Part shown: in pieces, positions 2,961-52,545 of the stretch
How positions within the stretch are numbered: the first letter of the stretch is position 1
Layout of the letters: every line of letters begins with the position of its first letter
NCBI RefSeq assembly: GCF_032444005.1
Contig: NC_091284.1
Span: forward strand, 803,954,001-804,018,000
Reading direction: 5' to 3'
Source: Ranitomeya imitator
Taxonomy: Eukaryota
DNA: 64,000 nt
Notes under the pieces: generated by a model
Told to the model about the DNA's origin: nothing
Seen by the model: the letters and a program-made list of their open reading frames with translations, nothing else
Databases searched by the model: none
Translations under genes and position numbers: made by a program

Positions 2961-3291
2961 TACACTAGAACTGAATGACCAGACCCCAAGAAGGCAGATT
3001 AAAGGGGCACTCCGGGGGTTTGTCAAGTTTGGACTGTCATGACATAAACCAAAATTTGGATGAAAGTGTCCACTGAATACCAAAGATGATCATCCTTCCT
3101 TGTATAGAGCCAACATATCCCCGGCCCCTTCCTCCTCTTTTTGGCTCATTATTAGACAATGTGTTTTCAGGTGGGCGAGCAGAGGAGTTAAATCTTGAAA
3201 AGTTGTGGCTGTCACTTATGGGGGTTGTGATTATTGTAAACTCACTGTCTCTGGTATCGGGACTTGCGGTTATTACCTTTATGGCAGTCCA

Positions 3292-9200: not shown

Positions 9201-12200
9201 GGGAGCTCTGTGGTTGGCACTGTTACTGGGAACTCTGGCTGGCACTGTTACTGGGAGCTCTTTGGCTGGCACTGTTACTGGGAGCTCTTTGGCTTGCACT
9301 GTTACTGGGAGCTCTTTGGCTGGCACTGTTACTGGGTGCTCTTTGGCTGGCACTGTTACTGGGAGCTCTTTGGCTTGCACTGTTACTGGGAGCTCTTTGG
9401 CTGGCACTGTTACTGGGAGCTCTTTGGCTGGCACTGTTACTGGGAGCTCTTTGGCTGGCACTGTTACTGGGAGCTCTTTGGCTGGCACTGTTACTGGGAG
9501 CTCTTTGGCTGGCACTGTTACTGGGAGCTCTGTGGTTGGCACTGTTACTGTGAGCTCTTTGGCTGGCACTGTTACTGGGAGCTCTTTGGCTGGACCTGTT
9601 ACTGGGAGCTCTTTGGCTGGCACTGTTACCTGGAGCTCTTTGGCTGGACCTGTTACTGGGAGCTCTTTGGCTGGCACTGTTACTGGGAGCTCTGTGGCTG
9701 GCACTGTTACTGGTAGCTCTGTGACTGGCACTGTTACTGGGAGCTCTGTGGTTGGCACTGTTACTGGGAACTCTTTGGCTGGCACTGTTACTGGGAGCTC
9801 TTTGGCTGGCACTGTTACTGGGAGCTCTTTGGCTGGCACTGTTACTGGGAGCTCTTTGGCTGGCACTGTTACTGGGAGCTCTGTGGCTGGCACTGTTACT
9901 GGGAGCTCTTTGGCTGGCACTGTTACTGGGAGCTCTTTGGCTGGCACTGTTACTGGGAGCTCTTTGGTTGGCACTGTTACTGGAAGCTCTTTGGTTGCAC
10001 TGTTACTGGGAGCTCTTTGGCTGGCACTGTTACTGGAGCTCTGTGGCTGGCACTGTTACTGGGTGCTCTTTGGCTGGCACTGTTACTGGGAGCTTTTTGG
10101 CTGGCACTGTTACTGGGAGCTCTTTGGCTGGCACTGTTACTGGGAGCTCTTTGGCTGGCACTGTTACTGGGAGCTCTTTGGCTGGCACTGTTACTGGGTG
10201 CTCTTTGGCTGGCACTGTTACTGGGAGCTCTTTGGTTGGCACTGTTACTGGGAGCTCTTTGGCTGGCGCTGTTACCTGGAGCTCTTTGGCTGGCACTGTT
10301 ACTGGGAGCTCTGTGGCTGGCACTGTTACTGGGAGCTCTGTGGCTGGCACTGTTACTGGGAGCTCTTTGGCTGGCACTGTTACTGGGAACTCTTTGGCTG
10401 GCACTGTTACTGGGAGCTCTTTGGTTGGCATTGTTACTGGGAGCACTTTGGCTGGCACTGTTACTGGGAGCACTTTGGCTGGCACTGTTACTGGGAGCTC
10501 TTTGGTTGGCATTGTTACTGGGAGCACTTTGGCTGGCACTGTTACTGGGAGCACTTTGGCTGGCACTGTTACTGGGAGCTCTTTGGTTGGCATTGTTACT
10601 GGGAGCACTTTGGCTGGTACTGTCACTGGGAGCACTTTGGCTGGCACTGTTACTGGGAGCACTTTGGCTGGCACTGTTACTGGGAGCTCTTTGGCTGGCA
10701 CTGTTACTGGGAGCTCTTTGGCTGGCATTGTTACTGGGAGCTCTTTGGTTGGCATTGTCACTGGGAGCACTTTGGCTGGCACTGTTACTGGGAGCACTTT
10801 GGCTGGCACTGTTACTGGGAGCTCTTTGGCTGGCACTGTTAATGGGAGCTTTTTGGTTGGTACTGTCACTGGGAGCACTTTGGCTGGCACTGTTACTGGG
10901 AGCTCTTTGGCTGGCACTGTTACTGGGAGCTCTTTGGTTGGCATTGTTACTGGGAGCACTTTGGCTGGCACTGTTACTGGGAGCTCTTTGGCTGGCACTG
11001 TTACTGGGAACTCTTTGGCTGGCACTGTTACTGGGAGCTCTGTGGCTGGCACTGTTACTGGGAGCTCTTTGGCTGGCACTGTTACTGGGAGCACTTTGGT
11101 TGGCATTGTTACTGGGAGCACTTTGGCTGGCACTGTTACTGGGAGCTCTTTGGCTGGCACTGTTACTGGGAGCTCTTTGGTTGGCATTGTTACTGGGAGC
11201 ACTTTGGCTGGCACTGTTACTGGGAGCTCTTTGGCTGGCACTGTTAATGGGAGCTTTTTGGTTGGTACTGTCACTGGGAGCACTTTGGCTGGCACTGTTA
11301 CTGGGAGCACTTTGGCTGGCACTGTTACTGGGAGGTCTTTGGCTGGCACTGTTACTGGGAGCTCTTTGGTTGGCATTGTTACTGGGAGCACTTTGGCTGG
11401 CACTGTTAATGAGAGCTCTTTGGTTGGTACTGTCACTGGGAGCACTTTGGCTGGCACTGTTACTGGGAGCACTTTGGCTGGCACTGTTACTGGGAGCACT
11501 TTGGCTGGCACTGTTACTGGGAGCTCTTTGGTTGGCATTGTTACTGGGAGCTCTTTGGCTGGCACTGTTACTGGGAGCTCTTTGGTTGGCATTGTTACTG
11601 GGAGCTCTTTGGCTGGCACTGTTAATGGGAGCTCTTTGGTTGGTACTGTCACTGGGAGCACTTTGGCTGGCACTGTTAATGGGAGCTCTTTGGTTGGTAC
11701 TGTTACTGGGAGCACTTTGGCTGGCACTGTTACTGGGAGCACTTTGGCTGGCACTGTTACTGGGAGCACTTTGGCTGGCACTGTTACTGGGAGCTCTTTG
11801 GTTGGCATTGTTACTGGGAGCTCTTTGGCTGGCACTGTTACTGGGAGCTCTTTGGTTGGCATTGTTACTGGGAGCTCTTTGGCTGGCACTGTTAATGGGA
11901 GCTCTTTGGTTGGCACTGTTACTGGGAGCTCTTTGGCTGGCACTGTTACTGGGAGCTCTTTGGCTGGCACTGTTACTGGGAGCTCTTTGGCTGGCACTGT
12001 TACTGGGAGCACTTTGGCTGGCACTGTTACTGGATTATGTGGCTGGCACTGTTAATGGGAACTCTTTGGCTGGCATTGTCACTGGGAGCACTTTGGCTGG
12101 CACTGTTACTGGGAGCTCTTTGGCTGGCACTGTTACTGGATTATGTGGCTGACACTCAGCGGATTCCTCTGCTGTCACACTATAATGGTACTGTGGCTGG

Positions 12201-12225: not shown

Positions 12226-13804
12226 CCCACAAATAGTATTCCATGTCTGACATACCATGGTGGTCCTGTGGACACTCGTTTGGTGATTTGTGGCGGACAC
12301 AGCCGTAGTGGCCCTGTGTCTGGTCCTCTTATGTGGGTCATGCAGTCGTCACTGGGACAGGCAGTATTCTGGTGGTGTACATGGCTGGCTCTGTTATGCA
12401 GATTTTGTGGGTTCAATGCCATGTTGGGCCTGTGGTTTATATAGTTGGCATATCTATAGGGGTCTTGTGGTTGGCCCATTCCTATATATGTATGTGAACA
12501 GTAATGGCGCCAGTATTGTCTATTTTTACGCACGTGTCACTTAATTCTGCATCCTCAAACTCCCAAAAGATATTCAGCAAATGTCAACCTATGTTTATTC
12601 ATGTCGCCGCTCCTTCACTCCAGCGACGCATCTGAGAAGTATTAATGCCGGAGAATTTTGCATTTCATAAAACATTGAGATCCGATGAAAACAAACTCAT
12701 TTTGATGTTTTTAAACATGTCGGATTTGGGATTTCTATACTTTCCCACCCCTGAGATTTTCATAAAAAGTGCTAGCCGTACGCGCCACTGTAATGCTGAA
12801 TGGATTAAAGGGGAAGTCTCCCGGGCCCTTGTGCCTAAGAGGGGGGAAGACCTCTCCTCCAGAAGCACATGGGAGGTGAAGGCCTGTTACAGATTTTGTA
12901 TTGGGGCCCAGGAGCTTCCATCTGGATCTGGAGACCTTATCTAGAGACCATATGGACCTAGAGGCCTATATTAACCTGAACTCCCAATATTTTAACCTCA
13001 AATCATGTTACATTTTAAGACCCTCTTGCTCAGACCTCCAAAAGTTGGAAAACCCATTTTTATTCATCACATTAGGAAATTCCGATTTAATAGAGGGGGC
13101 TCTTTCATTCAAGATCTGGAGTGGCGAATGACCACAAAGTGCGGCTCTCTGGAGGACTGTATTGTGTAATGCTTCATTTCTCCTGTGGTGGCACTGTAGG
13201 GAAATTGATCAGTTACAGCCAGGATTACGCAGCGATCACTGATGATCAATGAGATTTGTGTTATTAGTATTATATCAAGGCAGCTGTCTAACAAGAAGGC
13301 ATTGTCCAAAGTTGAGAACCCCTTAAATTTAACTTACTAACTTAAAACTAATCCTACTTTTACATAATAGTAAAATTAGAGTAATTTTTATGTTGGTAAT
13401 TACCAACCTGATTTCAGCCATTGTAACAGGGTGGAAAATCAGAGCTGATCTAATATAAACTTCCTCTGGCCCTTTGCAATCATTTTTATAAACCTTCTCC
13501 TCCATAGTCTTACTCCTGTATTCGGGAGGAGTTATTTATTAGAAATTCAGATTTTAAAGGATTTTGTGGATTCATTTGTCTCAATGCTGGGTGACAAACT
13601 ACACTGGTTCATCCTTCAAGAGATCGGCCCAAGGTACTCAGCGCCAGATGTACCCTGAAACTTTAATGTGTGACAGATGTAAGGTTGTGTCCTTTACCAT
13701 ATGGGCCCCGCAACCAGACATGGCGGCAGGGGAACACAGAAAATCTGCATGTAATATACACTCATTCATTATCTATTATGTACCTGTGCTTTACTGAGAT
13801 GCAT

Positions 13805-16640
13805 CATGTGACCATAGCATATGACAATGCCCATGTGGTCAGGATCATAGGTTATAACAATGCCCATGTGGTCAAGATTAAAGTGTATGACTATGCCCAT
13901 GTGGTCAGGATCATAGGTTCTGACAATGCCCATGTGGGCAGGATTAAAGTGTATGACAATGCCCATGTGGTCAGGATCATAGGTTCTGACAATGCCCATG
14001 TGGGCAGGATTAAAGTGTATGACAATGCCCATGTGGTAAGGCTCCCAGTGTATGACAATGCTCATGTGGTCAGGATCATAGGATATGACAATGCCCATTT
14101 GGTCAGGATCATAGGGTATGGCAATGCCCATGTGGTCAGGATCATAGGGTATGGCAATGCCTATGTGGTCAGTATGAATGTGTATGACAACATCCATGTG
14201 TTGAGGATTAACGTGTATGACAATGCTCATGTGGTCGGGATTGACGTGTATGACAATGCCCATGTGGTAAGGATCATAGGGTATGACAATGCCCATGTGG
14301 TCAGAATCATAGTGTATGACAATGCCCATGTGGTCAGGATCATAGGTTAAACCAAAGCCCATGTGGTCAAGATTATAGTGTATGACTATGCCCATGTGGT
14401 CAGGATCATAGGTTCTGACAATGCCCATGTGTGCAGGATTAAAGTGTATGACAATGCCCATGTGGTAAGGCTCCCAGTGTATGACAATGCTCATGTGGTC
14501 AGGATCATAGGATATAGCAATGCCCATTTGGTCAGGATCATAGGGTATGACAATGCCTATGTGGTCAGTATGAATGTGTATGACAACATCCATGTGTTGA
14601 GGATTAACGTGTATGACAATGCTCATGTGGTCGGGATTGACGTGTATGACAATGCCCATGTGGTAAGGATCATAGTGTATGACAATGCCCATGTGGTCAG
14701 AATCATAGTGTATGACAATGCCCATGTGGTCAGGATCATAGTGTATGACAATGCCCATGTGGTCAGGATTATAGTGTATGACAATGCCCATGTGGTCAGG
14801 ATCATAGCATATAACATTGCCCATGTGGTCAGGACCTTAGGGTATGACAATGCCCATGTGGTCAAGATTATAATGTATGGAAATGATAATGTCATCAGGA
14901 TCATAGTGTCTGACTCAGGGCCGGACTGGCCATCTGGCAATTCTGGCAAATGCCAGATGGGCTGTTCCAGTCATGGGTTGCATTGTCTGCTATGCTGTTA
15001 ACAGTATCAGTGTCCTCAGATTGCAATTGATACGGTGACCAGGGGAAGGAACAACGTGGTCCTATGTGCTTTCAATTGCCAGGGCTGAATTTCACTCTCA
15101 GTCCGTTCCTGGTCTGACTTGACAATGCCCATGTGGTCAGGATCATAGGGTATGACTATGCCCATGTAGTCAGGATCATAGGGTATGACAATGCCCATGT
15201 AGTCAGGATCATAGGGTATAACAATGCCCATGTGGTCAGGATCATAGGATATAACAATGCCCATGTGGTCAGGATCATAGGGTATGACAATGCCCATGTA
15301 GTCAGGATCATAGGGTATAACAATGCCCATGTGGTCAGGATCATAGGGTATGACAATGCCCATGTGGTCAGGATCATAGGGTATAACAATGCCCATGTGG
15401 TCAGGATCATAGGGTATAACAATGCCCATGTGGTCAGGATCATAGGGTATGACAATGCCCATGTGGTCAGGATCATAGGGTATAACAATGCCCATGTGGT
15501 CAGGATCATAGGGTATAACAATGCCCATGTGGTCAGGATCATAGGATATAACAATGCCCATGTGGTCAGGATCATAGGGTATGACAATGCCCATGTAGTC
15601 AGGATCATAGGGTATAACAATGCCCATGTGGTCAGGATCATAGGATATAACAATGCCCATGTGGTCAGGATCATAGGGTATAACAATGCCCATGTGGTCA
15701 GGATCATAGGATATAACAATGCCCATGTGGTCAGGATCATAGGGTATGACAATGCCCATGTAGTCAGGATCATAGGGTATAACAATGCCTATGTGGTCAG
15801 GATCATAGGATATAACAATGCCCATGTGGTCAGGATCAAAGGGTATGACAATGCCCATGTAGTCAGGATCATAGGGTATGACAATGCCCATGTAGTCAGG
15901 ATCATAGGGTATAACAATGCCCATGTAGTCAGGATCATAGGGTATGACAATGCCCATGTAGTCAGGATCATAGGGTATAACAATGCCCATGTGGTCAGGA
16001 TCATAGGGTATGACAATGCCCATGTGGTCAGGATCATAGGGTATGACAATGCCCATGTAGTCAGGATCATAGGGTATAACATTGCCCATGTAGTCAGGAT
16101 CATAGGGTATAACAATGCCCATGTGGTCAGGATCATAGCGTATGACAATGCCCATGTGGTCAGGATCATAGGGTATGACAATGCCCATGTGGTCAGGATC
16201 ATAGGGTATGACAATGCCCATGTGGTCAGGATCATAGGGTATGACAATGCCCATGTGGTCAGGATCATAGCGTATGACAATGCCCATGTGGTCAGGATCA
16301 TAGGGTATGACAATGCCCATGTGGTCAGGATCATAGGGTATAACATTGCCCATGTGGTCAGGATCATAGGGTATGACAATGCCCATGTAGTCAGGATCAT
16401 AGGATATAACATTGCCCATGTAGTCAGGATCATAGGGTATAACAATGCCCATGTGGTCAGGATCATAGGATATAACATTGCCCATGTGGGCAGCATTATA
16501 ATCTATGGAAATGATAATGTCGTCAGGATCAAAGTGTCTGAGTTGACAATGGCCATGTGGCTAACATCAAAGCTTATGCTAACCTCCATGTAGTCAGGAG
16601 AATGCATGCGTGGTCAGATCATAACGTGTTACAATGCTCA
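13805..16640. repeat. 33-bp minisatellite (GACAATGCCCATGTGGTCAGGATCATAGGGTAT)n, split by a hAT MITE
   Basis: The 11-aa periodic ORFs (DNAHVVRIIGY, YDPDHMGIVIP) follow from it. The left half is diverged, with a 429-bp (13 x 33) duplication marked by GGCTCCCAGTG near 14040 and 14469. The right half is homogeneous. Confidence 0.97.
14916..15111. mobile_element. hAT-family MITE, 196 bp
   Basis: Perfect 8-bp TSD GTCTGACT (14908-14915 and 15112-15119). Termini CAG...CTG with imperfect TIRs CAGGGCCGGACTGG / CAGGAACGGACTGA (11/14). Confidence 0.88.
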
Positions 16641-23474: not shown

Positions 23475-26400
23475 TGCAGGGTCCTCTCTCCTGTAGAGTG
23501 TCAGCTCTTATGTGCAGGGTCCTCTCTCCTGTAGAGTGTCAGCTCTTATGTGCAGGATCCTCTCTCCTGTAGAGTGTCAGCTCTTATGGGCAGGGTCCTC
23601 TCTTCTGTAGAGTGTCAGCTCTTATGGGCAGGGTCCTCTCTCCTGTAGAGTGTCAGCTCTTATGGGCAGGGTCCTCTCTCCTGTACAGTGTCAGCTCTTA
23701 TGGGCAGGGTCCTCTCTCCTGTAGAGTGTCAGCTCTTATGTGCAGGGTCCTCTCTCCTGTAGAGTGTCAGCTCTTATGTGCAGGGTCCTCTCTCCTGTAG
23801 AGTGTCAGCTCTTATGTGCAGGGTCCTCTCTCCTGTACAGTGTCAGCTCTTATGTGCAGGGTCCTCTCTCCTGTAGAGTGACAGCTCTTATGGGCAGGGT
23901 CCTCTCTCCTGTAGAGTGTCAGCTCTTATGTGCAGGGTCCTCTCTCCTGTACAGTGTCAGCTCTTATGGGCAGGGTCCTCTCTCCTGTACAGTGTCAGCT
24001 CTTATGGGCAGTGTCCTCTCTCTTGTAGAGTGTCAGCTCTTATGGGCGGGATCCTCTCTCCTGTAGAGTGTCAGCTCTTATGGGCAGGGTCCTCTCTCCT
24101 GTAGAGTATCAGCTCTTATGGGCAGGGTCCTCTCTCCTGTACAGTGTCAGCTCTTATGTGCAGGGTCCCCTCTCCTGTAGAATGTCAGCTCTTATGTGCA
24201 GGGTCCTCTCACCTGTAGAGTGTCAGCTCTTATGGGCAGGGTCCTCTCTCCTGTAGAGTGTCAGCTCTTATGTGCAAGGTCCTCTCTCCTGTAGAGTGTC
24301 AGCTCTTATGGGCAGGGTCCTCTCTCCTGTAGAGTGTCAGCTCTTATGGGCAGGGTCCTCTCTCCTGTAGAGTGTCAGCTCTTATGCGCACGGTCCTCTC
24401 TCCTGTAGAGTGTCAGCTCTTATGGGCAGGGTCCTCTCTCCTGTAGAGTGTCAGCTCTTATGGGCAGGGTCCTCTCTCCTGTAGAGTGTCAGCTCTTATG
24501 TGCAGGGTTCTCTCTCCTGTAGAGTGTCAGCTCTTATGTGCAGGGTCCTCTCTCCTGTAGAGTATCAGCTCTTATGGGCAGGGTCCTCTCTCCTGTAGAG
24601 TGTCAGCTCTTATGGGCAGGGTCCTCTCTCCTGTAGAGTGTCAGCTCTTATGGGCAGGGTCCTCTCTCCTGTAGAGTGTCAGCTCTTATGGGCAGGGTCC
24701 TCTCTCCTGTAGAGTGTCAGCTCTTATGTGCAGGGTTCTCTCTCCTGTAGAGTGTCAGCTCTTATGTGCAGGGTCCTCTCTCCTGTAGAGTATCAGCTCT
24801 TATGTGCAGGGTCCTCTCTCCTGTAGAGTGTCAGCTCTTATGTGCAGGGTCCTCTCTCCTGTAGAGTGTCAGCTCTTATGGGCAGGGTCCTCTCTCCTGT
24901 AGAGTGTCAGCTCTTATGGGCAGAGTCCTTCCTCCTGTAGAGTGTCAGCTCTTATGTGCAGGGTCCTCTCGCCTGTAGAGTGTCAGCTCTTATGGGCAGA
25001 GTCCTCTCTCCTGTAGAGCGTCACCTCTTATGTGCAGGGTCCTGTCTCCTGTAGAGTGTCAGCTCTTATGTGCAGGGTCCTCTCTCCTGTAGAGTGTCAG
25101 CTCTTATGGGCAGGGTCCTCTCTCCTGTAGAGTGTCAGCTCTTATGTGCAGGGTCCTCTCTCCTGTAGAGTGTCAGCTCTTATGGGCAGGGTCCTCTCTC
25201 CTGTAGAGTGTCAGCTCTTATGGGCAGGGTCCTCTCTCCTGTAGAGTGTCAGCTCTTATGGGCAGGGTCTTCTCTCCTGTATAGTGTCGGCTCTTATGTG
25301 CAGGGTCCTCTCTCCTGTAGAGTGTCAGCTCTTATGGGCAGGGTCCTCTCTCCTGTAGAGTGTCAGCTCTTATGCGCAGGGTCCTCTCTCCTGTAGAGTG
25401 TCAGCTCTTATGTGCAGGGTCCTCTCTCCTGTACAGTGTCAGCTCTTATGTGCAGGGTCCTCTCTCCTGTAGAGTGTCAGCTCTTATGTGCAGGATCCTC
25501 TCTCCTGTAGAGTGTCAGCTCTTATGTGCAGGGTCCTCTCTCCTGTAGAGTGTCAGCTCTTATGCGCACGGTCCTCTCTCCTGTAGAGTGTCAGCTCTTA
25601 TGGGCAGGGTCCTCTCTCCTGTAGAGTGTCAGCTCTTATGGGCAGGGTCCTCTCTCCTGTAGAGTGTCAGCTCTTATGTGCAGGGTTCTCTCTCCTGTAG
25701 AGTGTCAGCTCTTATGTGCAGGGTCCTCTCTCCTGTAGAGTATCAGCTCTTATGTGCAGGGTCCTCTCTCCTGTAGAGTGTCAGCTCTTATGGGCAGGGT
25801 CCTCTCTCCTGTAGAGTGTCAGCTCTTATGTGCAGGGTCCTCTCTCCTGTAGAGTGTCAGCTCTTATGGGCAGGGTCCTCTCTCCTGTAGAGTGTCAGCT
25901 CTTATGGGCAGGGTCCTCTCTCCTGTAGAGTGTCAGCTCTTATGGGCAGGGTCTTCTCTCCTGTATAGTGTCGGCTCTTATGTGCAGGGTCCTCTCTCCT
26001 GTAGAGTGTCGGCTCTTATGGGCAGGGTCCTCTCTCCTGTAGAGTGTCAGCTCTTATGCGCAGGGTCCTCTCTCCTGTAGAGTGTCAGCTCTTATGTGCA
26101 GGGTCCTCTCTCCTGTACAGTGTCAGCTCTTATGTGCAGGGTCCTCTCTCCTGTAGAGTGTCAGCTCTTATGTGCAGGGTCCTCTCTCCTGTACAGTGTC
26201 AGCTCTTATGTGCAGGGTCCTCTCTTCTGTATAGTGTCAGCTCTTATGTGCAGGATCCTCTCTCCTGTAGAGTGTCAGGTCTTATGTGCAGGGTCCTCTC
26301 TCCTGTAGAGTGTCAGCTCTTATGGGCAGGGTCTTCTCTCCTGTATAGTGTCGGCTCTTATGTGCAGGGTCCTCTCGCCTGTAGAGTGTCAGCTCTTATG

Positions 26401-27017
26401 CGCAGGGTCCTCTCTCCTGTAGAGTGTCAGCTCTTATGTGCAGGGTCCTCTCTCCTGTACAGTGTCAGCTCTTATGTGCAGGGTCCTCTCTCCTGTAGAG
26501 TGTCAGCTCTTATGTGCAGGATCCTCTCTCCTGTAGAGTGTCAGCTCTTATGTGCAGGGTCCTCTCTCCTGTACAGTGTCAGCTCTTATGTGCAGGGTCC
26601 TCTCTTCTGTATAGTGTCAGCTCTTATGTGCAGGATCCTCTCTCCTGTAGAGTGTCAGCTCTTATGTGCAGGGTCCTCTCTTCTGTATAGTGTCAGCTCT
26701 TATGTGCAGGATCCTCTCTCCTGTAGAGTGTCAGCTCTTATGTGCAGGGTCCTCTCTTCTGTATAGTGTCAGCTCTTATGTGCAGGGTCCCCTCTCCTGT
26801 AGAGTGTCAGCTCTTATGTGCAGGGTCCTCTCTTCTGTATAGTGTCAGCTCTTATGTGCAGGGTTCTCTCTCCTGTAGAGTGTCAGCTCTTATGTGCAGG
26901 GTTCTCTCTCCTGTAGAGTGTCAGCTCTTATGTGCAGGGTCCCCTCTTCTGTATAGTGTCAGCTCTTATGTGCAGGGTCCTCTCTCCTGTAGAGTGTCGG
27001 CTCTTTTAGTCAGGGTC
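23475..27017. repeat. 38-bp minisatellite (TGCAGGGTCCTCTCTCCTGTAGAGTGTCAGCTCTTATG)n, about 93 copies
   Basis: Directly visible. It fills about 3.5 kb of a 4003-bp FAT3 intron. Confidence 0.98.
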
Positions 27018-42800: not shown

Positions 42801-43724
42801 TTCATTTTCTCCCGGTAGCCACAGTGTCAGTAAGATGGCCGGACAGAATTGAGATGCTGCTCACCTGCAGATTAACCCTATATCTGCACGTTAATATCAT
42901 TTGGGGACACAGTAGGTTCCTTTAAGCAGGCAGTACCGGGGGAATTCTGCAGCGTGTGACTACGCCCCCATTTATCTGTGTGTGGATTCCCCTCTGTATC
43001 ATAAGGTTGCATTCGGCGGTGCCACATCTCTCCGAATCTGGGCCAAGCTCTTCCCACTTAGCATTGATTTTGCTGAGCTGGCTCCTGACAACCTATGGCT
43101 TTGTGCTGCACATCTGCATTCGGAGCCCGTCTGCGCTAATGAGATCTGAAGGGAAGCAACATGCTTGCTTGCTTCGTCCGCTCAAGCAGAGTCATTTTAG
43201 AGCTAATTAAGAACAGAATGCAGAAGCCGCCGCACACCCAGCCGATAATTTATTCTGTGTCTCGGTAGCCGGGGTGTTGCTGGTTTAGGGAATATTTATA
43301 AAGCGCCACATTCCAACGCATCCGCAGCTTAGAGGCGCAAGAATAACAATTAACATCAGGTCTAATAGAGGCGCTGACTCCTGCACATTCCGCCAAGGGG
43401 ACGGGACCTGGCATACAGCTATGCGCGGGAGAAACTGGCGTTTATGGTGAAACATAGTATTACGCTAAGTGTTTATTATACACTATAAAGTACTAAGGGC
43501 CGTACATAACACCACACACACTGTCAGGTATACGAATCCCTGATCGAAGCTGGTCATGAGGAAATAATGAGGAAACGGAAGCGTCATGGCAGCCATGGAT
43601 TGTATGATGTGAAAAAAAGTCTGCCACACCTGAAGCCTCCAGACATTGTGTTGCCAGACACCTTTAATCTTCACCTCCCTTCCTCTCCGTGAAAATGATG
43701 TGGACACAGATATTAGTTTGCTCC

Positions 43725-44820
43725 TCTCTCGCCTAAAAATGATGTGGCACAGATAGTACTGTGGTCCTCTTTCATCTGAAAATGATGCATACACAGATAG
43801 TACTGTGTCCCTCTTTCTCCTGAAAATGATGCAGACACAGATAGTACTGTGTCCCTCTTTCTCCTGAAAATGATGAAGACACAGATAGTACTGTGTCCCT
43901 CTTTCCCTTGAAAATGATGCAGATACAGATAGTACTGTGGTCCTCTTTCTCCTGAAAATGATGAAGACACAGATAGTACTGTGTCCCTCTTTCTCCTGAA
44001 AATGATGCAGACACAGATAGTACTGTGGTCCTCTTTCATCTGAAAATGATGCAGATACAGATAGTACTGTGTTCCTCTTTCTCCTGAAAATGATGCAGAC
44101 ACAGATAGTACTGTGTCCCTCTTTCTCCTGAAAATGATGCAGACACAGATAGTACTGTGTCCCTCTTTCTCCTGAAAATGATGCAGACACAGATAGTACT
44201 GTGTCCCTCTTTCCCTTGAAAATGATGCAGACACAGATAGTACTGTGTCCCTCTTTCCCTTGAAAATGATGAAGACACAGATAGTACTGCGTCCCTCTTT
44301 CTCCTGAAAATGATGCAGACACAGATAGTACTGTGGTCCTCTTTCTCCTGAAAATGATGCAGACACAGATAGTACTGTGTCCCTCTTTCCCTTGAAAATG
44401 ATGCAGACACAGATAGTACTGCGTCCCTCTTTCTCCTGAAAATGATGCAGACACAGATAGTACTGTGTCCCTCTTTCCCTTGAAAATGATGCAGACACAG
44501 ATAGTACTGTGTCCCTCTTTCCCTTGAAAATGATGAAGACACAGATAGTACTGTGTCCTTCTTTCCCTTGAAAATGATGCAGACACAGATAGTACTGTGT
44601 CCCTCTTTCTCCTGAAAATGATGAAGACACAGATAGTACTGTGTTCCTCTTTCTCCTGAAAATGATGAAGACACAGATAGTACTGTGTTCCTCTTTCTCC
44701 TGATAATGTTGCAGACACAGATAGTACTGTGTCTCTCTCTCTCCCTGAAAATAATCTAGACGCAGGTAGTACTGTGTTCGTCTCTTGCATGAAAATATTA
44801 TGGACACAGATAGCACTGTA
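43725..44820. repeat. 44-bp minisatellite (GAAAATGATGCAGACACAGATAGTACTGTGTCCCTCTTTCTCCT)n, about 25 copies
   Basis: TACTGT at 43801 and 43845 (period 44). Source of the repetitive minus-strand ORFs at 43483-44832. Confidence 0.96.
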
Positions 44821-47144: not shown

Positions 47145-49232
47145 TTAAGTAATTTAAGATTGGTTATTTCTATCTTTCCAGTCGTTTTATCTAACGGAAA
47201 CGTGAAACTTTTTTTTATTATTTTAATAAAATCTGGACCGAATTTAATAACGGTTTACTGTGAAAGTTCCCGAAAAGTTTTACAGAACCTCAGGATTAGA
47301 GTATGAAGCAATTAAGGTGCGTATTCTAGACTTTTGGTGGCCTTTAAACCTCTGTCAGATCCAGCAAGTCTCGCCTTTGAACTATACATCACTTTGTAAA
47401 AAACAAATCTTCTAAAAAATGGAAAGTCTACAAAAATGTCATTTTAAGAGCATCAGTAAGACTATATCGTGATGATACAGCCTTCTTTTTGATTAAATTG
47501 CTAACACAAAAAGTTCAGGCTGAGGCGACTGGCAAGAAAAGAGAGGAAGAAAAAATAAAATGTTCTAGCTCCGGGGTACAGGTTCTCTGCTACATCAGGA
47601 TGAACCGGAGAATGGCTTTGTTTTTTAGAACAATTACTTGCAGATATTCGCTTTATGCCCCTGATCTGATCTACGACTCTGATAACCACTACTGTCAGCT
47701 ATACCCAAGAAATCCATTAATGTTCAAGATAAAACTCCGACTCGGGAGCTGAAGGATGCTGTTAATAGCCAGGAAAATACAACATGTGCTTACATCAGAG
47801 ACATCTAGTGTCCCCCGGACAAAGGGGACACCTCTTGGACTTCAGCAGAACCCAAACCTAAACCTAAACTTTCTGATGTTCGAAAAGCATGGAACTAAAG
47901 TTTGGTACACGGCATTCGGATCACGAATATAACCTTCTGCCTGGCAAATACAGAACACAGACCACCTCTAGTCACATACAGACAATACAGAAGACCACCG
48001 AAACTGAGATGGAGAGTAGATATTAATTATAGGTACAAAGTTCAAACAAGACCCACCATCTATACAGAACCCAGGCCAGACCCACCCTCTATACAGACCC
48101 CAGGCAAACCCACCTTCTATAAAGACCCCAGGCCAGACCCACCTTCCATACAGAAGCCAAGCCAAACCCACTCTCTATACAGAACCCAAGCCAGATCCAC
48201 CCTTTATACAGCACCCAAGCCAAACCCACCTTCTATATAGACTCCAGGCCTGACCCACCCTCTATACAGACCCCAGGCAAACCCACCTTCTATACAGATC
48301 CCACGCCAGGGCCACCCTCTATAGAGACCCCAGACCAGACTCACGTTCTATACAGACCCCAGACCAGATCCACCCTCTATAGAGACCCCAGGCCAGGGCC
48401 ACCTTCTATACAGACACCAGGCCAGACCCACCTTCTATACAGAAGCCAAGCCAAACCCACTCTCTATACAGACCCCAGGCCAGGGCCACCCTCTATACAG
48501 ACCCCAGACCAGATCCACCCTCTATACAGACCCCAGACCAGACCCACCTTCTATACAGACCCCAGGCCAGACCCACCTTCTATACAGAAGCCAAGCCAAA
48601 CCCACTCTCTATACAGAACCCAAGCCAGATCCACCCTTTATACAGCACCCAAGCCAAACCCACCTTCCATATAGACCTCAGGCCTGACCCACCCTCTATA
48701 CAGACCCCAGGCAAACCCACCTTCTATACAGACCCCAGGCCAGACCCACCTTCTATACAGAAGCCAAGCCAAACCCACTCTCTATACAGAACCCAAGCCA
48801 GATCCACCCTTTATACAGCACCCAAGCCAAACCCACCTTCCATATAGACCCCAGGCCTGACCCACCCTCTATACAGACCCCAGGCAAACCCACCTTCTAT
48901 ACAGACCCCAGGCCAGGCCCACCCTCTATATAGACCCCAGGCCAAACTCACCCTCTATATAGACCCCAGGTCAGACCCACCTTCTATACAGACCCCAGGC
49001 CAGACCCACCCTCTATACAGACCTCAGGCCAGATCCACCCTCTATACAGACCCCAGGCAAACCCACCTTCTATACAGACCCCAGGCCAGGCCCACCCTCT
49101 ATATAGACCCCAGGCAAACCCACCTTCTATACAGACCCCAGACCAGATCCACCCTCTATACAGTTAGTAAATAACTTGGCACTCAACTTAGTGGATCGTG
49201 ATAATAAAGAAAAATAATTTTATTACTTGAAT

Positions 49233-49292
49233 AGCAGCCCAGCATAAACGTTTCGGTCAAACATTTAGACCTTCTTCAGTAAACCGACTGCT
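49233..49292 (-). ncRNA. Minimal type-I hammerhead ribozyme motif, sense to FAT3 pre-mRNA
   Basis: Exact reverse complement of 49999-50058. Confidence 0.75.
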
Positions 49293-49998
49293 GGTATAAT
49301 GGAGAGTATAGGGCACTGATATATGTAGATAGGGTCCTATGGTGGAGTTTTTGCAAGACCTCTAAGATTGAAGCAATTATCCAAGTAAATAGAACGTGTG
49401 CGTATTTCCGTTCCAAATAGGCTTGAAAGATAAAAGCTAGTATAAATAACTTAAGAGGTACTGGAATACTGCCAAGAAGCACGGGATATGGAGAAATGTC
49501 CAACTGAATGGCCTGGAGTTATATAATCCTGGCCAAAAGGGTGGTACATATAGGCACAGAGTACCGGAGACGCGGTGAAAATCTAATGCACAGGGCTTTG
49601 TAAGAAGGCTTCAAAAGGCAAGTCTCATAGGGAAGGTGCGCTGAGGATCTGTTCCGGTATAAGATAGGTAGGAGGTGAACATCAACGCGGTGTCCGCCGC
49701 TAGTTGAATGTTATTTTATACTCCGGTACTCTGTGCCTATATGTACCACCCTTTTGGCCAGGATTATATAACTCCAGGCCATTCAGTTGGACATTTCTTC
49801 ATATCCCGTGCTTCTTGGCAGTATTCCAGTACCTCTTAAGTTATTTATACTAGCTTATTATCTTTCAAGCCTATTTGGAACGGAAATACGCACACGTTCT
49901 ATTTACTTGGATAATTGCTTCAATCTTAGAGGTCCTGCAAAAACTCCACCATAGGACCCTATCTACATATATCAGTGCCCTATACTCTCCATTATACC

Positions 49999-50058
49999 AG
50001 CAGTCGGTTTACTGAAGAAGGTCTAAATGTTTGACCGAAACGTTTATGCTGGGCTGCT
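49999..50058 (+). ncRNA. Minimal type-I hammerhead ribozyme motif
   Basis: C3UGAAGA9 at 50012-50018, extra A, stem II GGUC/GACC (50020-50023 / 50033-50036), GAAA at 50037-50040, palindromic ACGU stem III, GUU triplet (predicted cut after 50044). Stem I AGCAGU-CGGU-U-UA pairs with UA-U-GCUG-G-GCUGCU. Paired by hand. Confidence 0.78.
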
Positions 50059-51160
50059 ATTCAAGTAATAAAATTATTTTTCTTTATTATCACGATCCAC
50101 TAAGTTGAGTGCCAAGTTATTTACTAACTATATGATTGCTGGTGTGGGAAACCTTTCTTGAGCACCGACACAGCTGTGCCACGATATACTTCACTATCCA
50201 CCCTCTATACAGACCCTAGGCCAGGGCCACCTACTATACAGACCCCAGGTCAGACACACCCTCTATACAGACCCCAGACCAGATCCACCCTCTATACAGA
50301 CCCCAGGCAAACCCACCTTCTATACAGACCCCAGGCCAGACCCACCCTCTATACAGACCTCAGGCTAGATCCACCCTCTATACAGACCCCAGGCAAGGTC
50401 CCCCCTCTATATAGACCCCAGGCCAGACCGACGCTCTATACAGACCCCAGGTCAGACGCACCCTCTATACAGACCCCAGACCAGATCCACCCTCTATACA
50501 GACCCCAGGCCAGTCCCACCCTCTATATAGACCCCAGGCCAGTCCCACCCTATATACAAACCACAGACCAGACCTACCTTCTATACAGACCCCAGGCCAG
50601 ACCCACCCTCTATACAGAAGCCAAGCCAAACTCACTCTGTATACCGACCCCAGGCTAACCCACCTTCTATACAGACCCCTCACCAAACCCAACCTCTATA
50701 TAGACCCCAGACCAGACCCACCTTCGATGCAGACCTCAGGCCAGATGTACCCTCTATTCAGAATCCAAGCCAACCCCCCTCTATACAAACCCCAAGCCAG
50801 AATCAACCTCTTTATAGACCCCAGGTCAGACACACGTTCTATACAGACCCCAGGCCAGACCCACTCTCTATACAGAACCCAAGTCAACCAAACCCTCTAT
50901 ACAGACCGCAGGCCAAACCCACCCTCTATACAGACCGCAGGCCAGACCCACCCTCTATACAGAACCCAAGCCAAATCCACCCTTTATACAGCACCCAAGC
51001 CAAACCCACCTTCTATATAGACCGCAGGCCAGACCCACCCTCTATACAGACCTCAGGCCAGATCCACCCTATACAGACCTCAGGCCAGATCCACCCTATA
51101 CAGACCACAGGCCAGACCCACACTCAATACAGATCCGAAGCCAGACCCACCCTCTATACA

Positions 51161-51476
51161 AATTCAAACTGAAGAAAAGGACAGCGCCACACCGGATAGT
51201 GAAAAGCAGCTCACATATTTATTCTGCCTCCTGTGGCAACGTTTCGGTCCAAAGACTTTTGTCAAGCTTGACAAAGGTCTTCGGACCGAAACGTTGCCGC
51301 AGGAGGCAGAATAAATATGTGAGCTGCTTTTCACTATCCGGTGTGGCGCTGTCCTTTTCTTCAGTTTGGATTTGGATGTTCTGTCTGGGATGGACCCCCT
51401 GGTGAGGACGTGCGCCCCGATGTCCATAGAGACTATATAATTATAGGGTGCGGCTTTACTGCTTTCTTTGAAACTT
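51161..51476 (+). mobile_element. Second Penelope-like fragment with a spacer-less fold-back palindrome (2 x 108 bp)
   Basis: The palindrome at 51159-51374 is centred on AAG|CTT (51266/51267), with 4 mismatches. It contains TTGACAAAGGTCTTCGGACCGAAACGTT and AATAAA (51310-51315); a unique tail runs to 51476. Confidence 0.75.
51266..51297 (+). ncRNA. Variant hammerhead core (U3-A8 covariation, cUUCGg stem II); stem I truncated
   Basis: U3UGACAA9 at 51268-51274, extra A, GGUC-UUCG-GACC, GAAA at 51288-51291, CGUU. Only 2 bp of stem I (GC/GC) remain, because the inversion point lies 2 nt upstream. Confidence 0.55.
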
Positions 51477-52545
51477 CCAACCTCTATACAGACCTCAGGC
51501 CAGACTCACCCTCTATACAGACCACAGGCCAGACCCACACTCAATACAGATCCGAAGCCAGACCCACCCTCTATACAGACCTCAGGCAAGATCCATCTTC
51601 TATAAAGACACCAGGCTAGACCCACCCTCAATACAGATCCCAGGTCAGTACCTCCTGAATACTGAACCCACACCAGACTTCCTAGTATACAGACCCTATG
51701 TGACACCAACCCATCTAAAGAAACCAGAACTGACCCCAATTGATCAACTAAGGTTTGCAAATGAATATAAATGTTGCGGTCTAGAAAACACAGAAATAAC
51801 TGTACATGCCTTTGGTAGAATGCATATTTGGATCATTTTGGGATGTGGCATTAATATTAAAGGGATGGGCAAAGATCTGAATACTGGCCCTTTTGCATTC
51901 ATGACAAATTCTCCTTGAGGAACGTTCTATAATATAGGCATGTACAATGTACATCTTACCTGCTATTAATTTGGTTCTACAATGAAGGTGTAGATACCAT
52001 CATTGACTGCAGCTTGGCTACACTGTCTATTGGAGTCTTTGGTAGTCTAAAATCTTTCTCCAGTCTCTTGAGGCTTATGAGTTTGCTCTACATCTCCTTC
52101 GGCTGGCCTTTACCTGTCCCACCCCTGCTTTAACTTCATTTTCAAAAAATACATAGTATGTTGCTGACATTAAAACTCCTCAAGGTAATTTATACAGAAT
52201 AGGTCTTGCCATGTTATAGTCGGAGCGACTGAAAGTCCCTAAGCTTGGCACTATGGATTTCACTAAGATGTCCTTTAAACTGTGTTTCCTTGTCATTTGC
52301 TTGCTGTTTCCCAACCATGATTCAGGGGGTTTCTCAAAATATAGTCAAAACTTCTTTGGACGATCACATTGAAGGAAAGCTACAAGATGTTTGACATATG
52401 AGTCGGAAAGTGTAGAAATTAGAAAGTAATGTTTTGGTGTCCCCTCATCTAGTATCTTTGAGTTAGAGGTTGGAACGAAGGATTCAAAGTTTCCCCAGTG
52501 GAGATGAACTTAAGAACGTGCATGACCTTAATTAGGTTCACTCAC

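What the first reader, a model, noticed from the sequence alone, without database searches (positions are those of the whole stretch)
49162..50195. Inverted pair of intact hammerhead ribozymes forming a 408-bp dsRNA stem in FAT3 pre-mRNA
Seen: about 99%-identical inverted arms, each with a complete hammerhead core (CUGAAGA, extra A, 4-bp stem II, GAAA, palindromic ACGU, GUU, extended stem I) and a downstream AATAAA. Established: Penelope-like elements carry minimal type-I hammerheads that are thought to cleave as dimers through a palindromic stem III. An extra A between A9 and G10.1 occurs in active natural hammerheads (e.g. CChMVd), and intronic hammerheads have been retained in amniotes (e.g. 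RECK). Inference: on either strand the antisense arm is transcribed first, so the ribozyme would be trapped in a long duplex as it emerges. This self-locking layout could protect the 13-kb intron from cleavage or a sense-oriented poly(A) signal, while creating an ADAR/Dicer substrate. The near identity of the arms implies a young insertion.
Basis: partly seen in the sequence, partly recalled or inferred. Interest (0 to 1): 0.8.

Follow-up and report, generated by a model that had tools for sequence, protein, structure and literature searches.

The report
Penelope-type retroelement inserted as mirror twins
The inverted pair of hammerhead motifs is real, but it is one fairly young insertion of a Penelope-like jumping gene laid down as two mirror-image, front-truncated copies, which is the usual layout for this class, so it is a clean example and not a new regulatory device.

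Summary
Arms 49164-49569 (-) and 49721-50133 (+) differ by 2 substitutions and 1 indel. Each carries a complete minimal type-I hammerhead motif, and the hairpin lies in a roughly 13-kb intron of a minus-strand FAT3-like cadherin gene.

The motif fits the published Penelope-like element (PLE) min-hammerhead on every descriptor feature. It does not occur in shuffled sequence. In 69 relatives from animal-associated metagenome contigs its helix I covaries strongly. In several of those contigs the same motif class sits between ORFs that end in a GIY-YIG endonuclease.

The layout is the standard PLE insertion signature: two 5'-truncated copies head to head, a 3' "tail" (50134-50197) on one side only, a 15-bp target duplication, and a minisatellite target. 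All 17 inverted hammerhead pairs found in other PLE loci were head to head. A second, older insertion 1 kb away (51160-51476) has the same build.

Published biochemistry explains it: the Anolis PLE protein nicks and extends both DNA strands and starts reverse transcription at two internal sites. The "self-locking" protective role is therefore unnecessary and unsupported. PLE min-hammerheads are essentially inactive as lone monomers.

The scan's own unchecked notes list about 20 similar inverted hammerhead inserts elsewhere in this genome. Rfam finds nothing here, but it also misses control PLE hammerheads.

The parts
49149..49163 (.). Left copy of the 15-bp target-site duplication (ccaccctctatacag) within the 29-bp minisatellite
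   Evidence: Read from sequence. The same 15-mer restarts at 50198-50212. Because the target is periodic, a 15-bp duplication cannot be told from a 14-bp deletion.
49164..49569 (-). Left arm: the PLE 3' region in minus-strand sense, without the tail. This is the copy in sense orientation in the host pre-mRNA.
   Evidence: The outer 2-6 nt (49158-49163) are ambiguous microhomology with the target.
49247..49279 (-). Minimal type-I hammerhead motif of the left copy (cut site between 49247 and 49246 on the minus strand)
49219..49224 (-). AATAAA of the left copy
   Evidence: Read from sequence
49570..49712 (-). Further 5' sequence of the left copy, making up most of the 'spacer'. The left copy is simply less 5'-truncated than the right one.
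   Evidence: Contigs of other copies (X3 record 16, 0 mismatches; X4 record 24) read rc(49710/49655..49570) directly into the arm sequence.
49713..49720 (.). 8-nt filler at the head-to-head junction of the two copies
   Evidence: Other copies diverge from the window beyond about 49712.
49721..50133 (+). Right arm: the PLE 3' region in plus-strand sense, 5'-truncated at 49721
50012..50044 (+). Minimal type-I hammerhead motif of the right copy. Helix I strands are 49999-50011 and 50045-50058. The cut site is after 50044.
50067..50072 (+). AATAAA of the right copy
   Evidence: Read from sequence
50134..50197 (+). One-sided 3' 'tail' of about 64 nt. It is the true 3' terminus of the family and is present only on the right copy.
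   Evidence: absent from the left arm.: contigs of other copies run colinearly through it (X3 record 20, X11 record 14, X4 record 24), end at 50195-50197 with unrelated flanks, and show very high summed depth.
50198..50212 (.). Right copy of the 15-bp target-site duplication
   Evidence: Read from sequence
48024..51640 (.). 29-bp minisatellite array that served as the target
   Evidence: families D1/D2, spacing 29

Best explanation
This is one retrotransposition event of a Penelope-like element family, either a truncated autonomous element or a non-coding derivative. It landed in a 29-bp minisatellite inside an intron of a FAT3-like gene.

Proposed mechanism (steps marked as shown or inferred):
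1. The PLE endonuclease made staggered nicks about 15 bp apart (inferred from the target duplication).
2. Both exposed 3' ends primed reverse transcription of element RNA (shown in vitro for an Anolis PLE, inferred here).
3. The bottom-strand primer started at the distal RNA start site. This gave the plus-strand copy with its 64-nt tail (49721-50197).
4. The top-strand primer started at the proximal site, about 85 nt 3' of the hammerhead cut site. This gave the tail-less minus-strand copy (49164-49712).
5. Both cDNAs stopped early, giving 5' truncation, and were joined head to head through an 8-nt filler. Each served as template for the other's second strand (inferred).

The result is a dead, non-coding insert. 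Its two pseudo-LTR hammerhead motifs face outward on opposite strands. The 406-bp hairpin in the host pre-mRNA is a by-product of this integration chemistry and not a selected device. The hammerhead belongs to the PLE life cycle. As a lone monomer in the host transcript it is expected to be essentially inactive. Divergence of 0.5% between the arms dates the event as fairly recent.
For: - The anatomy of arms, spacer, tail and target duplication comes.
- The motif meets every min-hammerhead descriptor feature of PMC4209133. It occurs twice in the window and 0 times in 100 shuffles, and it folds as helix I plus helix II.
- The same motif class (CUGANGA-A-GGUC..GACC-GAAACGUU) was found in at least 120 metagenome contigs, where I estimated fewer than 1 by chance.
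- In L011, L017 and L036 it lies between long ORFs with C-terminal GIY-YIG domains. L027 shows a weak RVT_1 match.
- Helix I was unconstrained in that search and still covaries. 83% of cells pair against 27-51% when the partner is slid, and the 1.1-2.1 pair reads AU31/CG13/GC13/UG4/UA3/GU2.
- 17 of 81 such hammerheads have an inverted partner. All 17 are heads-in and none tails-in.
- Craig et al. 2021 describe exactly this pattern: an inverted 5'-truncated copy, a tail at one end, and a microsatellite bias.
- Frangieh et al. 2024 report four relevant things. The protein cleaves and extends both strands. There are two internal RT start sites whose interval is the tail. The start lies 85-92 nt after the hammerhead cut site, against 83-89 nt here. 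The hammerhead cleaves only with protein.
- The family is high-copy. Other copies end at 50195-50197, and the 3' end and hammerhead are the most abundant parts. A cDNA-like contig shows sense transcription.
- A second insertion at 51160-51476 has the same architecture.
- No ORF is present in either copy.
Against: - No RT/GIY-YIG ORF of this particular family was seen. The link to PLEs rests on the motif class, the architecture and the literature, not on a full-length partner from this genome.
- Rfam hammerhead models give no hit even at E<=10. They also miss control PLE hammerheads.
- The tail is 64 nt, longer than the 30-40 bp usually quoted.
- The target duplication is ambiguous in a periodic target.
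- Self-cleavage was not tested.
- The inversion was not checked against raw reads. No listed contig bridges the 49712-49721 junction.
Confidence: 0.85

Rival explanations
1. The family is not a truncated autonomous PLE. It is a short, protein-free, PLE-mobilised element (retrozyme-like or SINE-like) that carries only the pseudo-LTR, hammerhead and tail module. The integration mechanism and architecture would be the same as in the main explanation. Only the identity of the source RNA differs.
For: All three frames of both copies are closed. A cDNA-like contig begins with what I recognise from memory as a SMART template-switch oligo, at the equivalent of 49655. It runs 562 nt in sense through the hammerhead to 50196, which would fit a short transcript unit. 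A 2026 preprint argues that animal retrozymes are non-autonomous PLE derivatives. Unchecked scan notes report non-coding hammerhead units in this genome.
Against: DNA copies extend at least 57 nt beyond that putative start, and a loose end adds 116 nt more. The unit is therefore longer than what is seen here and could run into an ORF. There is no tandem head-to-tail array here, which defines non-LTR retrozymes. The hammerhead lacks the short helix III and loop of classical amphibian retrozyme hammerheads.
Confidence: 0.3
2. One reading: the inverted layout is retained because it is functional. The antisense arm traps the sense hammerhead and the sense AAUAAA in a long duplex. This protects the FAT3 intron from cleavage or premature polyadenylation, and the duplex feeds ADAR or Dicer.
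For: The geometry is correct. In the minus-strand pre-mRNA the antisense arm is made first, and the hairpin is overwhelmingly stable at -851 kcal/mol. The sense copy carries AAUAAA.
Against: Heads-in pairs arise from the integration mechanism everywhere. All 17 inverted pairs in other animals' PLE loci were heads-in, a second one lies 1 kb away, and the layout is in the literature. Monomeric min-hammerheads show no detectable cleavage, and the Anolis one needs PLE protein. There is no orthologous conservation or expression evidence, and no RNA reads were available.
Confidence: 0.05
3. It is an assembly artefact, such as a fold-back chimeric long read, or a fold-back/MITE-type DNA transposon with long terminal inverted repeats.
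For: Near-perfect long inverted repeats are typical of both. Craig et al. note that PLE structures cause assembly problems. No listed contig bridges the inner junction.
Against: - The minisatellite continues in the same orientation on both sides with a 15-bp duplication.
- The arms differ by 2 substitutions and an indel.
- The tail is on one side only, and the two copies are truncated at different points.
- Other copies exist as single-orientation units with the tail.
- The arms carry a directional hammerhead module linked to GIY-YIG ORFs elsewhere.
Confidence: 0.04

Closest known systems
Canonical EN+ Penelope-like element insertions (Penelope/Poseidon/Neptune): pseudo-LTR with hammerhead, inverted 5'-truncated copy, one-sided tail (Craig et al. 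2021, PMC8557442; Frangieh et al. 2024, PMC11167929)
   Same: - Head-to-head inverted 5'-truncated copies
- A tail at one end only
- A target-site duplication
- Insertion into a simple repeat
- The hammerhead in the 3'/pseudo-LTR region
- A proximal 3' end about 85 nt after the hammerhead cut site, as in Anolis PAc
   Different: No RT/GIY-YIG ORF is present in this copy. The tail is about 64 nt against the quoted 30-40 bp. No ORF starts inside the hammerhead as it does in PAc; the AUG in loop II opens only 13 codons. There is partial (5 of 6 nt) microhomology between the nicked target end and the internal start site, whereas PAc start sites were reported as non-homologous.
Minimal hammerheads (min-HHR) of metazoan PLEs (Cervera & de la Pena 2014, PMC4209133)
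   Same: - Core CUGANGA / GAAA / UH
[quoted passage not shown]
- A G10.1-C11.1 pair
- No helix III, only a palindromic 15.2-16.2 (ACGU), implying action as a dimer
- An extended helix II
- That paper already reports dual motifs 100-700 bp apart on opposite strands, and about 9,000 min-HHRs in Xenopus tropicalis
   Different: The cleavage triplet is GUU, where GUC/GUA are more common. Some other copies of the family have C at that position. Helix I is long, about 12 pairs with one mismatch and one bulge.
Non-LTR retrozymes of amphibians and other animals (Cervera & de la Pena 2020, PMC7229834; 2026 preprint 10.64898/2026.07.22.740005)
   Same: Non-coding type-I hammerhead repeats related to PLE pseudo-LTRs. 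They are abundant and transcribed.
   Different: Retrozymes are head-to-tail tandem arrays of short units whose hammerheads have a short helix III. Here there is no tandem array, one hammerhead per copy of at least 550 nt, and an inverted layout.
L1 twin priming (inversion with 5' truncation) - from my own knowledge, not checked here
   Same: The second DNA strand at the target also primes reverse transcription, giving an inverted segment inside one target duplication.
   Different: L1 twin priming inverts an upstream part of one RNA and makes no long inverted duplication. Here both copies start from the 3' module, so the same 406 nt is present twice.
Conserved intronic hammerheads of amniotes (HH9 in RECK, HH10) - from my own knowledge
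   Same: A type-I hammerhead inside an intron of a host gene.
   Different: Those are canonical, monomer-active motifs recognised by Rfam models and conserved at orthologous positions. This one is a recent transposon copy that Rfam does not recognise.

Membership tests
Hammerhead ribozyme, minimal type I (PLE min-HHR) | Catalytic core C3U4G5A6N7G8A9 ... G12A13A14 ... A15.1-U16.1, H17 | tested here: met
   CUGAAGA, GAAA and A..U-U are read at 50012-50044 and are identical in both arms.
Hammerhead ribozyme, minimal type I (PLE min-HHR) | Unpaired nucleotide between A9 and G10.1, a G10.1-C11.1 pair, and helix II of at least 4 bp | tested here: met
   The extra A is at 50019. Helix II is GGUC/GACC and can extend by a U.U mismatch plus two A-U pairs. 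These features are listed in PMC4209133.
Hammerhead ribozyme, minimal type I (PLE min-HHR) | No helix III loop, with palindromic 15.2-16.2 so that two copies can form helix III in trans | tested here: met
   A-CG-U forms the palindrome ACGU. Only one sense copy exists per transcript here, so no intramolecular dimer is possible.
Hammerhead ribozyme, minimal type I (PLE min-HHR) | Helix I formed by the flanks and supported by compensatory changes among relatives | tested here: met
   Across 69 sequences, 6 of 6 helix I pairs show double changes. 83% of cells pair against 27-51% in slid controls, and 0 of 500 shuffles reach the score. The window copy pairs 49999-50011 with 50045-50058.
Hammerhead ribozyme, minimal type I (PLE min-HHR) | Self-cleavage at the predicted site | not testable with these tools
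   This needs in vitro transcription. Published min-HHRs are inactive as monomers and weak as dimers. The Anolis PAc hammerhead needs protein.
Rfam hammerhead families (Hammerhead_1, _3, HH9, HH10, II) | Covariance-model score at or above the gathering threshold | tested here: not met
   There is no hit at gathering or at E<=10. In the control, the same models miss hammerheads lying between GIY-YIG ORFs in L011, L017 and L063. The test is therefore insensitive for this class.
Penelope-like element (EN+) | ORF with a telomerase-like RT and a GIY-YIG endonuclease | tested here: not met
   All frames of both copies are closed and no other family copy is in the window. This is expected for a 5'-truncated or non-autonomous copy. 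The motif class is flanked by GIY-YIG ORFs in L011, L017 and L036.
Penelope-like element (EN+) | Insertion architecture: 5' truncation, adjacent inverted 5'-truncated copy, tail at one end only, target duplication | tested here: met
   Orientation rule: 17 heads-in and 0 tails-in in other loci.
Penelope-like element (EN+) | Full-length autonomous partner of the same family in the same genome | not testable with these tools
   The genome outside the window is not searchable. Unchecked scan notes report intact RT-GIY-YIG PLEs in this genome.
Non-LTR retrozyme | Head-to-tail tandem repeats of a short unit, each with a hammerhead | tested here: not met
   Only an inverted pair is present. There is no direct repeat of the unit.
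Fold-back / MITE DNA transposon | Symmetric terminal inverted repeats as the mobile unit | tested here: not met
   The ends are asymmetric, with a 64-nt tail on one side and different truncation points. Other copies are single-orientation units.

The most novel reading that the evidence does not exclude
Heads-in twin insertion acts as a selective filter. PLE 3' modules would persist in sense orientation inside introns mainly when the inverted twin hides their hammerhead and AAUAAA in a duplex. If so, sense-oriented solo copies should be depleted from introns relative to twinned ones, and the hairpins should be edited or diced.
Probability: 0.05. Interest if true: 0.55.

Novelty: already known. 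Interest (0 to 1): 0.15.

Why it matters
As a single locus it matters little. It is a textbook-quality example of how Penelope-like elements integrate.

Its modest value is as in vivo support for recent in vitro biochemistry. One insertion shows both target strands used as primers. It also shows two alternative reverse-transcription start sites (tail against no tail) within the same event. The proximal start lies about 85 nt after the hammerhead cut site, as in the Anolis element.

Two independent insertions of different families sit in the same register and orientation of a 29-bp minisatellite. This hints at sequence preference of the endonuclease.

For annotation, it warns that Rfam models miss this whole class of hammerhead. 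It also warns that long intronic hairpins in PLE-rich genomes are usually integration by-products.

Tried and rejected
- **Rfam.** Searches at gathering threshold on the whole window and at E<=10 on the locus found no hammerhead. A control on PLE loci shows the models do not see this class, so I set the negative aside.
- **Six-frame translation of both copies.** No ORF, so there is no direct RT/GIY-YIG link.
- **BLAST of the element against the window.** No further copies.
- **Sequencing runs.** No run on record as RNA and no raw reads. Editing, small RNAs, transcript ends and read-level support for the inversion could not be tested. Read laying gave contigs only, and I laid only 49540-50230 to avoid sending a long repeat.
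- **RNAcofold of two motifs.** It did not return the hammerhead dimer as the minimum-energy structure. This is uninformative, because a 4-bp trans helix III is weak.
- **The search of earlier findings by sequence.** Blank.
- **Rejected readings.** I rejected a DNA fold-back transposon, an assembly artefact and a retrozyme tandem array; the reasons are given under the rival explanations and the membership tests.
- **Fixed spacing idea.** I considered a universal fixed distance from the hammerhead cut site to the tail-less end. It holds for the two window elements and PAc (77-92 nt) but not for invertebrate loci (30-61 nt).
Full report
**1. Observation**

The inverted repeat is present as described. 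The repeat finder reports arms 49158-49433/49858-50133 and 49434-49569/49721-49856, each 99% complementary. The split is caused by one 1-nt indel. The alignment shows 2 substitutions and that indel over about 406 nt.

The 33-nt hammerhead core occurs exactly twice in the window, at 50012-50044 (+) and 49247-49279 (-). None is expected by chance. Read from the sequence, it consists of:
- CUGAAGA
- an extra A
- GGUC-loop-GACC
- GAAA
- CG
- U16.1 and U17, with the cut after 50044
- AATAAA 22 nt further on

A script implementing the published min-hammerhead descriptor finds only these two sites and none in 100 dinucleotide shuffles. The isolated 67-nt motif folds into helix I plus helix II around an open core. 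The 1161-nt minus-strand RNA folds into one hairpin of -851 kcal/mol.

Cadherin-domain exons lie on the minus strand at about 52.5-52.9 kb, 38.9-39.4 kb and 22.3-23.2 kb. The nearest Atlas cluster for the last one is 'FAT3 protein (Fragment)'. The element therefore sits in a roughly 13-kb intron. The left copy is the sense one in the pre-mRNA and is transcribed after its antisense twin.

**2. What the motif is**

Rfam gives no hit at gathering or at E<=10. The motif nevertheless matches every feature that Cervera and de la Pena (PMC4209133) list for the minimal hammerheads of metazoan Penelope-like elements:
- the conserved boxes
- a G10.1-C11.1 pair
- no helix III, but a palindromic 15.2-16.2

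To test the class independently, I scanned metagenome contigs for CUGANGA-A-GGUC-N4-9-GACC-GAAACGUU. At least 120 loci matched, against my estimate of fewer than 1 by chance. They are evidently host DNA in animal-associated samples.

The flanks were not part of the pattern, yet they form helix I with abundant compensatory change. All six pairs show double changes. 83% of cells pair against 27-51% with slid partners, and the innermost pair reads AU31/CG13/GC13/UG4/UA3/GU2.

In L011, L017 and L036 the motif lies between long ORFs whose C-termini carry a GIY-YIG domain. L027 has a weak RVT_1 match. That is the canonical ORF-pseudoLTR(hammerhead)-ORF tandem of endonuclease-positive PLEs. Rfam also misses these control hammerheads, so its silence on the window is uninformative.

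**3. Anatomy of the insertion**

The two copies are not symmetric.
- The right (+) copy runs 49721-50197. It includes a 64-nt extension (50134-50197) that the left copy lacks.
- Contigs of other genomic copies run through this extension without mismatch. They stop at 50195-50197 with unrelated flanks (X3 record 20, X11 record 14, X4 record 24, loose ends). The extension is therefore the true 3' end of the family, which the PLE literature calls the 'tail'.
- Most of the 151-nt spacer is the continuation of the left (-) copy. Contigs from two runs read rc(49710 or 49655..49570) straight into the arm (X3 record 16 with 0 mismatches, X4 record 24).
- The left copy is thus 49164-49712, and 8 nt of filler (49713-49720) join the two 5'-truncated heads.
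- The 15-mer ccaccctctatacag flanks the whole unit, at 49149-49163 and 50198-50212. In a 29-bp periodic target this equals a 14-bp deletion, so the duplication is likely but not provable.
- Neither copy has an open frame.

**4. Mechanism**

Craig et al. 2021 state that PLE insertions are highly 5'-truncated and often have an inverted 5'-truncated copy adjacent. They also carry a 30-40-bp tail at one end only and favour microsatellites.

Frangieh et al. 2024 showed several relevant things for the Anolis PLE protein:
- It cleaves and extends both target strands.
- It starts reverse transcription at two adjacent internal RNA sites, and the interval between them is the tail.
- The start lies 111-118 nt into an ORF whose hammerhead cut site is at +26, so 85-92 nt after the cut.
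- The hammerhead cleaves only when the protein is present and is dispensable for insertion in vitro.

Here the tail-less end lies 83-89 nt after the cut site.

I infer the following. The bottom-strand nick primed at the distal site and gave the + copy with its tail. The top-strand nick primed at the proximal site and gave the - copy without a tail. Both cDNAs ended early and each templated the other's second strand after an end-to-end jump. Nicking and extension of both strands is published biochemistry. The rest is inference from the anatomy.

**5. Generality**

- Among 81 hammerheads in the metagenome loci with at least 300 nt on both sides, 17 (in 15 loci) have an inverted partner. All 17 are heads-in and none tails-in. 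Several are spacer-less palindromes.
- One kilobase away in this window, a second and older insertion (51160-51476) has the same build. Its arms are 111 nt long and 95.5% identical, with no spacer. It carries a 99-nt one-sided tail on the same side. Its hammerhead is the published U3-A8 variant, with the same GGUC/GACC helix II and the same GAAACGUU. It sits in the same register of the minisatellite.
- Cervera and de la Pena already noted dual min-hammerheads 100-700 bp apart on opposite strands.
- The scan's own unchecked notes list about 20 inverted hammerhead/PLE inserts in this genome, which one follow-up calls a frog. They include a 6.4-kb head-to-head PLE and intact RT-GIY-YIG elements.

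**6. The family**

Runs from several species labels hold the sequence. Summed contig depth is 10-50 times higher over 49996-50190 than over the body. Many related copies diverge just upstream of 50007-50009 and just after 50043-50047. The roughly 40-nt hammerhead is therefore the most widely shared block.

One 641-nt contig starts with letters whose reverse complement matches, from my memory, a SMART template-switch oligo. It then runs in sense from the equivalent of 49655 to 50196 with 5 mismatches. This is evidence that some copy of the family is transcribed, though not this locus.

Whether the family is a truncated autonomous PLE or a non-coding derivative remains open. I put the odds at 0.3 for the non-coding derivative.

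**7.

The geometry is right, and a 400-bp intronic duplex would be a plausible ADAR or Dicer substrate. Nothing indicates selection for 'self-locking', for three reasons:
- The layout is what the integration chemistry produces everywhere.
- A monomeric min-hammerhead shows no detectable cleavage in vitro.
- Only one sense copy exists per transcript, so the dimer needed for helix III cannot form in cis.

The 0.5% divergence between the arms supports a recent event. Under my assumed neutral rate of 1-2 x 10^-9 per site per year this is roughly 1-2.5 million years. That rate is an assumption and not a tool result. Gene conversion between arms could make the insertion look younger than it is.

**8. 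Verdict**

It is a known kind of object with a known layout, and interest is low. What remains untested is cleavage activity, RNA editing or small RNAs, read-level support for the inversion, and the autonomous partner.

Noticed in passing
window 51160-51476: This is a second, older PLE-type insertion. It is a spacer-less 111-nt palindrome (arms 51156-51266 and 51267-51377, 95.5% identical) with a 99-nt one-sided tail (51378-51476). Its hammerhead is the published U3-A8 variant (UUGACAA) with a UUCG loop. It shares GGUC/GACC and GAAACGUU with the first element. It sits in the same register (ccaccctctataca) and the same orientation of the 29-bp minisatellite. The unit's only AT-rich patch is at that register, which may explain the coincidence through the endonuclease's reported AT preference.
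   Followed up: partly
window 49679-49710: A 32-nt block inside the 5' part of the left copy has 5-30 times the summed contig depth of its surroundings, in both a DNA run and a cDNA-like run. It also occurs on short contigs with unrelated flanks. There is no Rfam hit, and it is unexplained.
   Followed up: no
window 49570-50197 (family level): Contigs identical or 99% identical to this element occur in runs labelled as at least four different organisms, some of them tiny data sets. The family is therefore high-copy and shared between species, through either close relatives or horizontal spread.
   Followed up: no
window 49655 (minus-strand sense): One contig of run X4 begins with what looks like a template-switch oligo directly before the equivalent of 49655. 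This suggests a transcription start inside the pseudo-LTR about 377 nt upstream of the hammerhead. It rests on a single contig, and I recognised the oligo from memory.
   Followed up: no
window 49540-50230 against other copies: Differences between this copy and other copies are dominated by T>C on the + strand in all four runs laid (table 1). Some copies have C at position 17 of the hammerhead (50044), giving the canonical GUC triplet.
   Followed up: no
loci L006, L010, L011, L013, L069, L099: AATAAA directly 3' of helix I recurs in several unrelated PLE families, as it does in the window element. This holds even where the next ORF follows it (L011, L063).
   Followed up: no
window 3000-12100, 13700-16600, 26000-26800, 43500-44800, 48024-51640: The window is packed with long minisatellite arrays. 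Their six-frame 'ORFs' of hundreds of codons are repeat artefacts.
   Followed up: no
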